A stretch of DNA of 63,090 nt, filler included, from Cercozoa sp. M6MM (taxonomy: Eukaryota > Protista > Endomyxa: Ascetosporea), in NCBI GenBank assembly GCA_040357565.1. It is 12 parts of 12 records of this genome, joined end to end, with 100 filler letters (N's around TTAATTAATTAA, not from the genome) between each part and the next. Parts side by side here need not be neighbours in the genome. Positions count along the whole stretch, not along the records: positions 57,523 to 61,888 come from JBDODJ010001160.1; 11 more parts are not named here. One strand, given 5' to 3'. Positions 57,523-62,339 of this stretch are shown here, in pieces (the first letter of the stretch is position 1; every line of letters begins with the position of its first letter). The notes beneath the pieces are model-generated. The model did not search any database and was not told where the DNA came from. It saw nothing but the letters and a program-made list of their open reading frames with translations. The position numbers and the translations under genes are program-made.

Positions 57523-58927
57523 GAGCAGAAGCGACAGAACTAATCAATCACTACGCTAAAGAGAGCACACTGTGTCTACAAACTGACACCACACCAATTT
57601 CCGCTTGGAGAAGAGCAGCCACAAACCGCAAGATCACCGACGCTGAACTGAGCGAAATACCACATAGAAGGAGAAAGATTCTCGGAAGGATCATCAAGAC
57701 AGTGAACAGACCCAGAGAACACGAGACATGGTCAATATGAAAAACGGATGCTGAACACCAAAGAAAAAGGAGAAACCCGTATCGCACTCCTGATTGACAA
57801 AGGAACAATCTTGCACCTGACAACACCCCAAAAAACAGAGATGGATGAGATTGATGCACAACTGAAGGAATTAACAAAGGACATGCACATCACGGTACAC
57901 TGGGTACCATCACACATCGACATTCACCTCAACGAACTAGCAGACAAAGAAGCAAAGAAAGGAAGGAACAACCACAACAGGAGAAACTGGATCAAAATAA
58001 ACAAAGACCACAAGAAACTGAAAAAGCAGACCCGAAACAGCAAAAACAATGAACCGCAACACCCTCTCAGAAGGGCCAGAGTCAGAGCTCTACGAAAAAC
58101 ACACGTCAGAAACCCCTGGAAACATATCAGGAACTCAAACAAACTACTCAGAATCGCCAAAGAGCGCAAACTCAGCATCGCAGACATCCGCACACTCTCA
58201 AGATTCCTCTGCAACAGACTTGGAAGCTTCAAGTACTACAACTACGCCCAAATACCGCGAAAGTGCAATGAATGCAAAGCCAGAGGCAGACTCAGGACTC
58301 CCAACTGCAAGGGATGCAAACAACGACTACAAAAGCGCGAAGTAAGCGAGTGCCCCGACTGCGCAGGTACCTGGGAAATGCAGAAGACACTCTCGACACG
58401 TACCACCGATTGCTGGAATGCAAAGTAACGGAAGCTATCAGACACAACACCAATGCGGCCCAATGGCGCACAATTGAAGACATACTGGCCAACCCTGAGA
58501 ACCTAGCAACACTCAACAGAATGCACCAAGGCACCAAGATCTCCTGGGACGAGGAAGCAACTGTCGAAGGACAACCAGCCTCCCAGCAGGTAATGGACCG
58601 AGAGGTCCCCGACATAGACTAGGCCACCACTCACAGCAGTGGTGGCCCCAAGTCTATGTCTGATTGCTTGCTTCGTTATCGAGTGGAGAGGCGGGAGGAC
58701 GACGACGGGACGACCGACACCGCCTGCGACGCCTCTCTACTTGTAGCCCGCTACCTGCACCAACCATGAAGTCGACTTCGGTGTCTGGGGAACGTCAAAA
58801 GGGGAGTTGTATGGTCCTACCCTAAGCGGGCGGTAGACACGGCCATGCTCTTGTGACCCACCCCAGACTGGTGCAGGGGAACTAAATTTACATAGTTGGT
58901 TTCCGAGAAGACTCAACTATCTAACTA
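57523..58927 (+). mobile_element. 3' end of an RNase H-containing non-LTR retrotransposon (LINE), frameshifted; 5' part lost at the gap
   Basis: Intronless and A-rich. RNase H C-terminal motif ITVHWVPSHIDIHLNELADKEAK, LSRFLCNRLG, a CCHC knuckle CPDC...EDTLDTYHRLLEC across a frameshift near 58368, stop at 58620-58622, structured 3' UTR and NCTA tail. Confidence 0.88.
58611..58927 (+). ncRNA. Structured cis-acting RNA module (multi-helix with pseudoknot) forming the LINE 3' UTR
   Basis: Helices read directly: 58611-20/58651-60, 58622-30/58639-47, 58680-93/58730-43, 58754-62/58869-77, 58783-90/58861-68, 58809-16/58841-48, 58817-21/58832-36, 58892-98/58914-20; pseudoknot 58746-52/58825-31. Conserved in a second copy. 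Confidence 0.75.
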
Positions 58928-59338
58928 GCAAGCAACAACTCCAAAAGCCAAAACCAATGCAACGACTAGCATACTGCGGTTCAATTGACTTCATTCGGTA
59001 TTTAGCTAGCGTATCGTAATAGACGACTTGGGCATTTATGACTGCGTATTGTAAGTAGCACACTCTCACTTAATGTTGTTTGCTTATCGCTCGTGCACGT
59101 GCCGACGTCAAGCCATACCCACACTGCCGAAAACTGGGTTTAGGAAAGAAACTCAACTTGAGCCAGCGCCAGTCGTTATTCTAGTTGACCTTGTTTTGAC
59201 ATTCACAGGTAGGCTCGACACCGAGCGAGTTTTGCATGTCACAGCAGGCGAGCCAATACTCTCGAGTTTTGGAAATTTACCTAAACTGACAGATATACTG
59301 TCTGTGACAGCAAACACGACTCAAAACTCGCCAAAACA

Positions 59339-60923
59339 ATGCGCTTCCTGATCCACGTGCTTCTGTTGATCTCGTGCGTCGGCGTGCTATCGACGCAGCC
59401 TGCTGCTCCAGCGGCAGCTCCCCAAGTGGGAGCACCGCCAGCTCCAACACCTCAGCCGCAACCTGGCCTCTTTAGTCGAATGCGCAGTACCGTGTCCAGC
59501 GCCATCGCAGGCGTACAAGCCTGGCGGTACCGTAACACCGTCAGAGAAGCTGCCGTACGTGCCCATGTCACCGAGCTCCTTGGTCAAGGCGCCCACATTC
59601 GACGGTGGGACAGCAGTCGCACTCAGACTCTGCCGGAGTACCAGAGTCACCAATACGAGCAGTTCCTTCGGCCTGACTTTGCGAATGAAGTCAACACAGA
59701 AGCAGGTCAGCAAACTGCATGTTGGCATTGGGTGCTATGCATCTTCTTGTAAATATACTACCCCGCGTGTTACAGACAAACGCGTGCGAACAGAAGTCGA
59801 GCGAGCCTTCAACAACGCAGTGCATGAGGCGGCACCACAACTTGCAGGTACTGTGAAAGTATCGTGCAGCCTTAAAGAAGGGCAACTGTGCATCTGGAAA
59901 GTGCAGAAAAGTTATGGACCGACCCTCGTGCGGCGTGGGATTCCCAAAATACGCGGCAGTTGCAAACGTACCAGCATTGGACGCAGCAACACGCTCCCGA
60001 ATGGCTGCAACCTCTGCTTGATGAAACCACCTTTAACGACAGAGTCAAGCAGCGAGCTCGTACTGCCTTTCACTACCTAGGGTACTGTACTATAGTGCAT
60101 GCAATATAGTGGAGCTTGTTCAAGACAAGATTGCGACCAAAAAGAAGGAAGCGGTTAAAGAAGCCAGTGAGCGGCACTTGGGTATTCGAGCCAGATAGGG
60201 AAGTCACAACTACGATCAATGCCCTTTTACTGTAGAGCCCATACTTAAAAACAAGGACGCCGCTTGGACTCAGCAGGACACCGAACACTTGGACTCGTTC
60301 TCGAACTTCAACGGTCACGAGACCTGGAAACAGCAGGTATTTGACAACTTCGAACAGGCCGTGCGCGAAAAAACTGGTGCGGCTATCTATAAAACAACTG
60401 TATGTAGTCCCTTGCACAATAACTCAGTTAATAAATGCAGTGCGCGTGGTTAAACGCAAGGTGAACAGCGACGACTTCTTTCGCCTTGCTGTCACTCAGG
60501 CTTCGGGCATGCGCTTGGATACTGATCACCGTTGGAATAATGAGGACACTCGACAACTCCCAGTGTACCGCCACTGCGGTGGCGACAAGCGCTGGCTAGA
60601 GGAGTCGCGTCTCATGACGCCTGAGTTCAATGAGGCTGTCGAAACTGCTGCAGGTACAGTACTGTGCTCTGGCTTTACTCAAGGAAACTTGTGCCAGTGT
60701 GTCAGTGTTCTGTGACGGGAACCAAAACACTGTATATTCAGGACAACTCGCAACGGGTCTGCTGTCGTCGCTGTCCTACGGGGCAGAAACCCTTGCGCGC
60801 CAAGGACTCACCCAAAGCGCCTCGTCGACCAGTAGCAGTCTTGGTGGCGAACCAACGCGCGTCTACTTTGAAACCGCCGAGCCCAGTGTACCCGAGCAGA
60901 CTCCGACCGCCGGCTTAGGCTAG
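59339..60923 (+). CDS. Secreted tandem-repeat protein (399 aa, 7 exons), candidate effector or surface protein
   Basis: Signal peptide MRFLIHVLLLISCVGVLS, Pro/Ala linker, four W-x4-T-x2-L-x2-[YF]...F-x3-V repeats. Exons 59339-59705, 59776-59847, 59907-60059, 60110-60181, 60236-60376, 60441-60653, 60742-60923 sum to 1200 nt with an open frame. Confidence 0.85.
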
Positions 60924-61599
60924 TAGTCGGAACCACCGAACGTCTTCCGGATGGCTGCACTAGCACCATTGAAACTGAACCCTCCGTCAGAAGCATACTA
61001 AGCCCACCGCAGCTCCGAGTATTTGAATCGCAGGACTGCCGAAACTGAAAACTGTCGTGAAACTGACACTGAAATTGAAACTGAAACTTGCGGTAGTTCA
61101 TGTGGTAGTTCATGCGCTGGATAGACCGAGCTTTGCAAGAAATGGGAGAAATTTGCTTTGCTTTCATAGTACTTCTCGATTAGCTCTTCGCATAGACATA
61201 CCGCGCTATTGTTGCCGCTTTTGCATCTTGTCGTTTATACTAGTGGGTAGGCTATTTGCGTGCCAAGCAGGACATTTAACTAAACTGACAGATAACGTAC
61301 GGTTCCTGAAAGAAATTACCCCAACTTGACTAAGTTCTTACGTCAAACTAGACGGAGTTGTCGACGAATCTTCCGGCACTGAACAGGCCCTCAAACACAT
61401 CCAGTCACAGCCCTGTAGGCAGACTACGGTAACGTACGGTAGAGCCACAAACTCTTATCTCTTCTTTCTCTTTTGCTTGACGTGAATGATGGTAGGATAG
61501 TCTGAGACATTCTTTACACGTACGCGAGGAAAAACGAAACAAGAAACACTCAAATTTAATCTTCAGTTTGACGAACGAACGGAAACCGGAGCAAGCTTT

Positions 61600-61840
61600 A
61601 ACTTAATGAGGCGGACACGGGACAGCAAGCCACTGCGACAGACCGCGCCACTTGCGCCAGAGGTTCGCCGGCGAGAGCTTACAGCATCGACAGCAACTTG
61701 GGCTGCTCCTGCACAAATGAGCGTACACACAAGTGTCCTGGGAGGACATCCCGGTAGGGACAGGCAAAAAAGTACCTTGGTGGCAGCGGGAGCGTTGGCC
61801 TTGTGCTGCAGGTAGTCGAGTGCGGCCTATCCTCACCGAG
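61600..61840 (-). CDS. Exon fragments of a hypothetical protein next to the linker
   Basis: GC-rich segments bounded by AG/GT (AALDYLQHKANAPAATK|); downstream frame unresolved. Confidence 0.3.
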
Positions 61841-62339
61841 TGATGAGACCACACACACACGCACACACACTGGCACAGGGGGGGGGGGNNNNNNNNNNNN
61901 NNNNNNNNNNNNNNNNNNNNNNNNNNNNNNNNTTAATTAATTAANNNNNNNNNNNNNNNNNNNNNNNNNNNNNNNNNNNNNNNNNNNNCCCCCCCCCCCC
62001 CCAGCCAATTAAAAGATCCAGAAAAACCAAACAATGATCATGGATTGGAAACGTTAAGAACCACGTAATTAACTTCACGTACCGTCACGCGGCTTGTAGT
62101 GCCACTTAACATGGACAGAAATGACGATCGATTCTGTGAAAAAATGCCACGCTGTCACGCCCGCGTTCACCGCTCTGGTGCCCGTCTTTTAGTGCAAACA
62201 CCAATGTGAGTACACCAGGTGCCACACAAAACGTCAAACAAATAGATTTGAGTCGATCTTGATCAGAAGGACTCAAAATTATTATTACAGCAGCGGTGGG
62301 CGGCAAGATTTAAGCCTTCGTGCACTAGAACAGAGTGTA

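What the first reader, a model, noticed from the sequence alone, without database searches (positions are those of the whole stretch)
58611..58927. Large pseudoknotted RNA module at the 3' end of an RNase H LINE: candidate new structured RNA
Seen, 5' to 3': (i) a hairpin over the stop codon, GACATAGACT/AGTCTATGTC plus GGCCACCAC/GTGGTGGCC; (ii) a 14-bp stem 58680-93/58730-43 with two G-U pairs; (iii) a three-way junction of CCTGCACCA/TGGTGCAGG, a GAAG-TCGA-CTTC hairpin and GTCTGGGG/CCCCAGAC; (iv) a long arm GTCA/TGAC, GTATGGTC/GGCCATGC, CTACC/GGTAG whose 10-nt loop (AGCGGGC, 58825-31) pairs with GCCCGCT (58746-52) just 5' of the junction, forming a long-range pseudoknot; (v) a terminal stem-loop ATAGTTG/CAACTAT followed by an NCTA tail. 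Mismatches are mostly G-U on this strand, which points to RNA. The purine-rich internal segment GGAAC.TCAAAAGGGGAGTTG is conserved in the second copy. Known: stringent LINEs use a 3' stem-loop plus tandem tail, R2 elements use structured 3' UTRs for template selection, and some retroelements carry ribozymes. I do not recognise this fold as HDV, hammerhead or another family I know. Inference: a dedicated RT-recruiting template module, a nuclease-resistant element, or a new ribozyme.
Basis: partly seen in the sequence, partly recalled or inferred. Interest (0 to 1): 0.82.

Follow-up and report, generated by a model that had tools for sequence, protein, structure and literature searches.

The report
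Highly structured LINE 3' UTR RNA
The roughly 320 bases after the stop codon of a decayed, very divergent RNase H-bearing LINE retrotransposon fold into an unusually stable multi-helix RNA that matches no catalogued RNA family, and it is most likely the tag by which the element's reverse transcriptase recognises its own RNA, although no second copy could be found to test this.

Summary
The + strand of 58605-58935 folds at -152.4 kcal/mol, z -7.9 against dinucleotide shuffles.

I add three features:
- a 9-bp closing stem (58664-72/58927-35);
- a three-way junction with no linker nucleotides;
- a sharp composition island.

The ORF upstream is the frameshifted tail of an RNase H LINE. It is cut by the piece's edge and has no close relative among 1.84 billion representative proteins. 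Rfam 15 gives nothing, including R2, ribozyme and xrRNA models.

- The 7-bp pseudoknot is energetically plausible but only borderline against chance (p about 0.05).
- The G-U strand argument is thin. Both strands fold with 8 G-U pairs, and the junction domain scores the same on both.
- The "NCTA tail" is two units and not detectable as a repeat.

No other copy could be fetched. Covariation, conservation and the element's 3' end are therefore untested.

Verdict: a real, strongly structured LINE 3' UTR, probably a stringent-type RT-recognition module. It is a new member of a known kind. Interest is moderate.

The parts
57525..58622 (+). 3' tail of a LINE ORF2, cut at the piece's 5' edge and read in two frames. 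Frame 3 covers 57525-57731, frame 1 covers 57748-58428, and frame 3 again covers about 58366-58622. It contains the RNase H C-terminal half (HWVPSH...NELADKEAKKG), a Cys-rich stretch with three CX2C pairs, then H-x4-C and a short tail. The stop TAG is at 58620-22.
   Evidence: Translations are. Pfam RNase_H gives E 1.7e-4, below the curated cut-off. The HMMER search of 1.84e9 representatives gave 9 weak hits, all on the RNase H motif. BLASTP against P0004, an RNase_H + zf-RVT LINE tail, gives E 2e-12. The Atlas neighbours carry RNase_H/zf-RVT. AT skew is +0.4 to +0.76. The CCHC reading across the frame change is by eye.
58611..58660 (+). H1: a 20-bp bipartite hairpin (10 + 10 bp, 6-nt loop) that encloses the stop codon.
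   Evidence: MFE -35.0 kcal/mol, z -8.8. All pairs are Watson-Crick, so the minus strand folds equally well (z -7.1).
58664..58935 (+). A domain closed by the 9-bp stem H0 (TTGCTTGCT 58664-72 / AGCAAGCAA 58927-35). It brackets H2, the three-way junction and H9.
   Evidence: It is in the MFE and centroid and is exactly complementary. Pair probability is 0.96 in all contexts. On its own, a 9-mer complement within 330 nt is not rare (about 0.2 expected).
58680..58743 (+). H2: a long hairpin with a 14-bp stem containing 2 G-U pairs, plus a weakly paired G/A/C-rich apical part.
   Evidence: z is -5.6 on the + strand and -2.8 on the minus strand. This is the only domain with a clear + strand preference.
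58746..58752 (+). GCCCGCT, the 5' strand of the candidate pseudoknot. It lies in the linker between H2 and the junction.
   Evidence: It is the exact complement of 58825-31. The duplex energy is -13.3 kcal/mol, and keeping both strands free costs 3.0 kcal/mol. Chance p is about 0.05.
58754..58877 (+). Three-way junction domain. H3 (9 bp) closes it, H4 is a short hairpin with a UCGA loop, and H5-H6-H7-H8 form a long arm. H3, H4a and H5 abut with no unpaired nucleotide between them.
   Evidence: MFE -58.4 kcal/mol, z -3.1 (1 of 200 shuffles as good). Helix probabilities are 0.77-1.00.
58798..58808 (+). Purine-rich asymmetric internal loop AAAGGGGAGUU, opposite UCUUG (58849-53). It has alternative registers (AAGG/UCUU or GGGAG/CUCUU).
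   Evidence: sequence and MFE. Conservation was not checkable here.
58822..58831 (+). 10-nt apical loop CUAAGCGGGC of the long arm. Positions 58825-31 form the 3' strand of the candidate pseudoknot.
58892..58920 (+). H9: terminal stem-loop ATAGTTG/CAACTAT (7 bp). It is preceded by an A/U-rich single strand at 58878-91.
   Evidence: z -2.2, 7 of 200 shuffles as good. Probability is 0.65. This is the weakest helix.
58936..58970 (+). An A/C-rich, CAA-rich tract (CAACAACTCCAAAAGCCAAAACCAATGCAA...). It is the possible degenerate tail and 3' end of the element.
   Evidence: AT skew returns to +0.36/+0.22 at 58873-59022 and is lost beyond about 58975. No tandem repeat is found by TRF. The boundary is inferred, not mapped.

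Best explanation
Positions 58611 to about 58935 are the 3' untranslated region of a non-LTR (LINE) retrotransposon of the RNase H-bearing, APE-type kind.

In the element's sense RNA this region folds on its own into the following parts:
- a 20-bp hairpin that encloses the stop codon;
- a domain closed by a 9-bp stem, which holds a long G-U-containing hairpin;
- a linker-free three-way junction with a long arm, interrupted by a purine-rich internal loop;
- a terminal hairpin preceded by an A/U-rich single strand.

An A/C-rich tail follows. The tip of the long arm may pair with the strand just 5' of the junction to form a pseudoknot.

The most likely role is that of a stringent-type LINE 3' tail. 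The element's own ORF2 protein binds this fold and so picks its own RNA. It places the RNA's 3' end at the nicked target, so that target-primed reverse transcription starts there.

Shown here: the helices, their exceptional stability, their autonomy from the surrounding sequence, the composition island, the LINE identity of the ORF, and the absence of any catalogued RNA family. Inferred: that the structure is under selection, that the pseudoknot forms, where the element ends, and the protein-binding role.
For: - Helices are exact: 87 WC + 4 G-U pairs and no mismatch.
- z is -7.87 for the + strand. Domain z values are -8.8, -5.6 and -3.1.
- All but one of the 150-nt windows with z below -3 in the piece lie here. 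Helix probabilities do not change in larger contexts.
- The LINE's strong A-over-T skew (+0.4 to +0.76) collapses to about 0.1, with GC rising to about 0.6, exactly from the stop codon to about 58870. The skew then returns until about 58970. A segment that must pair with itself would show this pattern.
- The ORF tail is LINE-like: RNase H followed by a Cys/His tail.
- The + strand folds better than the minus strand: -152.4 vs -145.8 kcal/mol and z -7.9 vs -5.6.
- The pseudoknot duplex is worth -13.3 kcal/mol against a 3 kcal/mol cost.
- Precedent: ORF2 proteins of stringent LINEs strictly recognise their cognate 3' stem-loop (PMC4176376; PMC1636434). R2 proteins bind a structured 3' UTR element, pseudoknotted in birds, with an A-rich single strand leading into the RT active site (PMC12222951; PMC12503042).
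Against: - There is no comparative evidence at all. No second copy or relative could be fetched, so conservation and covariation are untested.
- The copy looks young: only about two frame changes in 1.1 kb. Intact helices therefore say nothing about selection after insertion.
- Strand preference is modest. H1 is a perfect palindrome, the junction domain scores alike on both strands, and G-U counts in the MFE are equal.
- The pseudoknot has p about 0.05 under a loose null.
- There is no tandem-repeat tail, and the element's true 3' end is not mapped.
- Only the last ~1.1 kb of the ORF is present, so APE and RT were not seen.
Confidence: 0.5

Rival explanations
1. The fold is real and RNA-level, but its role is stability or 3'-end definition, not RT recruitment. 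For example, it might block 3'-5' or 5'-3' exonucleases in an xrRNA-like way, or substitute for a poly(A) tail.
For: The module has a three-way junction and a candidate pseudoknot to the strand just 5' of the junction. It is very stable. There is no clean poly(A) or repeat tail.
Against: No match to any Rfam xrRNA or other model at E up to 10. The pseudoknot is only borderline. No such element is known to me in LINEs (own knowledge). The topology differs from flaviviral xrRNAs, where the 5' end is ringed by the junction (own knowledge).
Confidence: 0.13
2. The helices are DNA-level palindromes or a by-product with no function. They might be inverted duplications or a small foldback insertion in one decayed copy, and need not be a selected RNA structure of the family.
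For: H1 is a perfect inverted repeat and folds equally well on both strands. The junction domain has equal z on both strands. G-U counts are equal on the two strands. No conservation data exist.
Against: H1 encloses the stop codon, so it is integral to the element. Twelve nested, mismatch-free helices forming one closed domain are not what simple inverted duplication gives. H2 and the whole region prefer the + strand.
Confidence: 0.2
3. The module contains a self-cleaving ribozyme that processes the LINE transcript.
For: Ribozymes are known in non-LTR elements: HDV-like in L1Tc/R2 (PMC3185411) and twister variants in Schistosoma elements (PMC8501958). This module is a compact multi-helix fold with a possible pseudoknot.
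Against: No hit to HDV-like, hammerhead, twister, pistol, hatchet or hairpin models, even at E up to 10. The HDV-like ribozyme of L1Tc sits at the 5' end of its mRNA (PMC3185411); this module sits at the 3' end, where cleavage would remove the template's tail.
Confidence: 0.04
4. H1 and/or H2 are hairpin precursors of small RNAs (miRNA/siRNA-like) that silence the element.
For: H1 is a 20-bp near-perfect hairpin. The only Rfam hits are to miRNA hairpin models on the minus strand.
Against: Those hits score 25.7 and 19.6 bits against gathering scores of 93 and 100, so they reflect generic hairpin shape only. There are no small-RNA data. This reading does not explain the junction domain.
Confidence: 0.05

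Closest known systems
3' tails of stringent-type LINEs (eel UnaL2, zebrafish ZfL2-1/ZfL2-2; L2 clade)
   Same: Both are structured RNA at the 3' end of an APE-type LINE that the cognate ORF2 protein must recognise (PMC4176376, PMC1636434). In both, a stem with an internal loop matters. Both lack a plain poly(A) dependence.
   Different: The known tails are single short stem-loops of tens of nucleotides, followed by short tandem repeats. This module is about 320 nt with about 12 helices, a three-way junction and a possible pseudoknot, and has no detectable tandem repeat. The clade also differs: this is an RNase H-bearing element. Binding and function are untested here.
R2 retrotransposon 3' UTR RNA (Bombyx R2Bm, avian R2Tg; Rfam R2 element)
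   Same: Both are multi-helix 3' UTRs of a few hundred nucleotides. In R2 a compact element, pseudoknotted in birds, is bound by the RT/N-terminal extension, and an A-rich single strand leads to the active site. Here a pseudoknot candidate and an A/U-rich single strand (58878-91) precede the last hairpin.
   Different: R2 has a restriction-like endonuclease, no RNase H, and inserts into 28S rDNA (own knowledge). This element has RNase H and a short Cys/His tail, and lies beside an ordinary gene. There is no Rfam match and no detectable sequence or fold homology.
RNase H-bearing APE LINEs with an RNase_H + zf-RVT C-terminus (I/Tad1-like group in the broad sense)
   Same: The ORF tail has the WxPSHxxIxGNExAD RNase H motif followed by a Cys/His motif and a short tail, as in P0003 and P0004.
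   Different: The match is very distant: at most 38% identity over 40 residues to anything among 1.84e9 representatives. There is an extra Cys-rich insertion with three CX2C pairs. RT and APE were not seen, so no clade can be assigned.

Membership tests
RNase H-bearing APE-type LINE (non-LTR retrotransposon) | RNase H domain downstream of the RT | tested here: met
   The C-terminal half of RNase_H matches PF00075 at E 1.7e-4, which is below Pfam's cut-off. There are nine HMMER hits on the same motif. BLASTP to the RNase_H+zf-RVT tail P0004 gives E 2e-12. Only the C-terminal half is in one frame.
RNase H-bearing APE-type LINE (non-LTR retrotransposon) | Reverse transcriptase and APE endonuclease domains | not testable with these tools
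   The piece starts at 57523, inside the ORF2 tail. Upstream sequence is absent.
RNase H-bearing APE-type LINE (non-LTR retrotransposon) | C-terminal CCHC (zf-RVT-like) motif | tested here: inconclusive
   CPDC (frame 1) and H-x4-C (frame 3) are readable by eye across a frame change. Pfam does not detect zf-RVT in either piece.
Stringent-type LINE 3' tail | Structured stem-loop at the extreme 3' end of the element RNA | tested here: inconclusive
   Structure is shown from the stop codon to 58935. The 3' end of the element is only inferred from composition, at about 58960-58980. No target-site duplication or second copy is available.
Stringent-type LINE 3' tail | Short tandem repeats after the stem-loop | tested here: not met
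   TRF finds nothing at minimum score 30 in 58600-59340. There are only two NCTA units and a loose CAA-rich tract.
Stringent-type LINE 3' tail | Conservation among copies or partner SINEs, and requirement for retrotransposition | not testable with these tools
R2 3' UTR RNA | Match to the curated covariance model, and an R2-type element (restriction-like endonuclease, 28S rDNA target) | tested here: not met
   No Rfam hit at E up to 10. The ORF tail carries RNase H, and Pfam detects no endonuclease domain in it. The flanking DNA gave no rRNA match in the Rfam scan and holds an intron-containing ORF with a signal-peptide-like start.
Small self-cleaving ribozymes (HDV-like, hammerhead, twister, pistol, hatchet, hairpin) | Match to the family's conserved core (covariance model) | tested here: not met
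   cmscan against all 4227 Rfam 15 families with permissive filters gave only two far-sub-threshold miRNA-hairpin hits in the module, both on the minus strand.
Exoribonuclease-resistant RNAs (xrRNA) | Match to known xrRNA models; ring-forming pseudoknot around the 5' end | tested here: not met
   No Rfam hit. The ring topology cannot be tested by sequence tools.

The most novel reading that the evidence does not exclude
An APE-type, RNase H-bearing LINE lineage from an essentially unsampled eukaryote carries a large, autonomously folding 3' domain as a conserved functional module. The domain has a stop-codon hairpin, a closed domain with a linker-free three-way junction, and a long-range loop-to-junction pseudoknot. 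This would be an R2-like complex RT-recruiting RNA evolved independently outside the R2 clade, or one with an added nuclease-blocking or catalytic role. It would define a new structured RNA family.
Probability: 0.18. Interest if true: 0.65.

Novelty: new member of a known kind. Interest (0 to 1): 0.4.

Why it matters
Most LINEs are thought to pick their own RNA through a structured 3' tail. The RNA-protein recognition is understood in detail only for R2 and a few L2-clade fish elements. If this module is conserved, it would be an independent, much larger example in an RNase H-bearing APE LINE. It would offer a new RNA fold for Rfam and a further template-recognition module to compare with the R2 3' UTR elements now used for transgene insertion. 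As it stands it is a single, unconserved-until-shown sequence, so its value is as a lead.

Tried and rejected
**Searches for other copies (all negative)**
BLASTN shows none extends beyond 15-24 nt, so they are chance hits. This used the single metagenome scan.
- A 25-base structural pattern of the junction core gave 0 hits in prokaryote genomes and in viral contigs.
- The H1b palindrome pattern gave 7 viral loci with no further similarity.
- Protein-guided locus searches in genome contigs and viral contigs gave no relatives.

**Protein searches**
- The word search with the 226-aa ORF found nothing.
- The full HMMER search gave only 9 weak RNase H hits and no family member.
- Cluster look-up gave no informative source for the best hit.

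**Host identification**
- Exon 1 of the neighbouring gene has no homologue and no Pfam domain. The host remains unknown.

**Readings rejected**
- tRNA or tRNA-like: ARAGORN found 0.
- Any Rfam family, including rRNA, snRNA, ribozymes, R2 and xrRNA.
- A tandem-repeat tail.
- G-U asymmetry as strong proof of the RNA strand.

I did not build a covariance model, because there is only one sequence.

Full report
**What the piece is.**
Only 57523-61888 is real sequence. Its first 1.1 kb is strongly A-rich on the + strand, with AT skew +0.4 to +0.76. It reads as the tail of a LINE ORF2 in two frames: frame 3 for 57525-57731, frame 1 for 57748-58428, and frame 3 again from about 58366 to the TAG at 58620-22.

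The frame-1 ORF carries the C-terminal half of RNase H (HWVPSH...NELADKEAKKG).
- Pfam PF00075 scores E 1.7e-4, below its cut-off.
- The full HMMER search of 1.84 billion representatives returned only nine weak hits, all on this motif.
- Two of them, P0003 and P0004, are RNase_H + zf-RVT tails typical of LINEs. P0004 aligns pairwise at E 2e-12.
- The ESM Atlas neighbours are eukaryotic RNase_H/zf-RVT clusters.

After RNase H come three CX2C pairs. Across the frame change there is an H-x4-C, which I read by eye as the usual LINE C-terminal Cys/His motif. Pfam does not confirm it.

The word search found nothing. No protein closer than 38% identity over 40 residues exists in the libraries, so the family is essentially unsampled. 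The neighbouring gene (59339-60920, intron-containing, signal-peptide-like start) has no homologue or domain either. The host is unknown. Nothing suggests it is human.

**The observation.**
The helices are perfectly complementary apart from four G-U pairs: 87 WC, 4 G-U, 0 mismatches.

- A 9-bp stem H0 (58664-72/58927-35) closes everything from H2 to the terminal hairpin into one domain.
- An ACC/GGT extension of the small hairpin means H3, H4 and H5 meet with no unpaired nucleotide, giving a 'perfect' three-way junction.

Stability is far beyond chance.
- The whole region gives z -7.87, with 0 of 100 shuffles as good.
- By domain: stop-codon hairpin -8.8, H2 -5.6, junction domain -3.1 (1 of 200 shuffles), terminal hairpin only -2.2 (7 of 200).
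- In a 150-nt sliding scan of the whole piece, the windows below z -3 are those over 58523-58772 plus one window in the neighbouring gene. The junction domain is split by that window size.
- Helix probabilities are 0.65-1.00 and identical in 336-, 751- and 1301-nt contexts. The module therefore folds independently of its flanks.

The LINE's A-over-T skew collapses to about 0.1 and GC rises from about 0.47 to about 0.6, exactly between the stop codon and about 58870. An A-rich composition then returns until about 58970. A composition island that coincides with the helices is what self-pairing demands.

The return of the skew suggests that the element runs on through a CAA-rich tract (58936 to about 58970) before host DNA begins. 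That boundary is inference.

**Weaker points.**
1. *Pseudoknot.* AGCGGGC (58825-31) and GCCCGCT (58746-52) are exact complements. The duplex is worth -13.3 kcal/mol, and forcing both strands single costs only 3.0 kcal/mol. However, when the unpaired nucleotides are shuffled, a loop-to-single-strand Watson-Crick run of 7 or more appears in 5.3% of trials. The null is loose, because it treats the 36-nt top of H2 as loop. The pseudoknot is plausible but not established.
   - The minus strand folds at -145.8 kcal/mol with z -5.6.
   - Its MFE has the same number of G-U pairs, 8 vs 8.
   - H1 is a perfect palindrome.
   - The junction domain scores -3.1 on the + strand and -3.5 on the minus strand.
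   - Only H2 (-5.6 vs -2.8) and the overall z favour the + strand.
   - The better argument for the + strand is simply that it is the LINE's sense RNA.
3. *Tail.* The 'NCTA tail' is TCTA+ACTA only, and TRF finds no repeat at the lowest threshold.
4. *Age.* The copy has only about two frame changes in 1.1 kb, so it is young. Intact helices do not show purifying selection after insertion.

**Known families.**
Rfam 15 (4227 models, permissive filters, E up to 10) gave only two hits in the module. Both are miRNA-hairpin models on the minus strand over H1, at 25.7 and 19.6 bits against gathering scores of 93 and 100. That reflects generic hairpin shape.

Nothing matched R2, HDV-like, hammerhead, twister, pistol, hatchet, xrRNA, rRNA or snRNA models. 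ARAGORN finds no tRNA.

**Search for relatives.**
This is the decisive missing evidence.
- DNA patterns from the module found only chance matches in viral and metagenome contigs.
- They found nothing in prokaryote genomes or viral contigs for the junction core.
- Protein-guided locus searches were blank.

Conservation and covariation could therefore not be tested, and I built no covariance model from a single sequence.

**Mechanism.**
The best reading is a stringent-type LINE 3' recognition module.
- In zebrafish and eel L2-clade LINEs, the ORF2 protein strictly recognises its cognate 3' stem-loop, and this is required for retrotransposition (PMC4176376; PMC1636434).
- In R2, the protein binds a structured 3' UTR element, pseudoknotted in birds, with an A-rich single strand feeding the RT active site (PMC12222951; PMC12503042).
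- By analogy, the closed domain here would be bound by ORF2. The purine-rich internal loop is the most obvious protein or tertiary contact site. The A/U-rich strand, H9 and the A/C-rich tail would be positioned at the nick for priming.
- The stop-codon hairpin could help the newly made protein meet its own RNA. This is speculation.

Rivals are a stability or exonuclease-blocking element, non-functional DNA-level palindromes, a ribozyme, and small-RNA hairpins. They are listed with odds in the Rival explanations section.

**Verdict.**
It works like, and is best filed as, a new member of the known kind 'structured LINE 3' UTR / template-recognition RNA'. The specific family-level tests (tandem tail, R2 model, ribozyme cores) were not met, and conservation is untested. 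Interest is moderate (0.4). It would rise if copies show covariation, especially for the pseudoknot.

Noticed in passing
window 59271-59295 and 61270-61294: A 25-nt direct repeat, GGAAATTTACCTAAACTGACAGATA, occurs twice at 92% identity and 2 kb apart. The first copy lies 44 nt upstream of the ATG at 59339 of the neighbouring gene. It may be a core-promoter or regulatory motif of the unknown host.
   Followed up: no
window 59339-60920 (+): A gene with several short GT-AG introns and a signal-peptide-like N-terminus (MRFLIHVLLLISCVGVLS...). It appears to have internally repeated Trp-containing modules. There is no Pfam domain and no homologue for exon 1 in the word search, so it is a lineage-specific secreted protein candidate.
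   Followed up: partly
window 61845-61888: The piece ends in an imperfect (CA)n run followed by G10. The poly-G looks like a short-read sequencing or assembly artefact at a contig end.
   Followed up: no
window 58261-58372 (+, frame 1): The LINE ORF tail has an unusual Cys-rich insertion with three CX2C pairs (CNEC, CKGC, CPDC) before the usual H-x4-C. Relatives such as P0003 and P0004 have a single C-x-C...H-x4-C motif.
   Followed up: partly
window 60473-60622 (+): This is the only other 150-nt window in the piece with a folding z below -3 (z -3.5 on the + strand, -1.1 on the minus strand). It lies inside the neighbouring gene.
   Followed up: no
protein P0001 (ENA, 674,836-bp contig): This was the best HMMER hit (E 1.8e-9). 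The protein consists of four tandem repeats of the RNase H C-terminal motif (CHLTFTWCPSHCVVRGNELADVATKEG...). It is an odd repeat array and not a normal RNase H.
   Followed up: no
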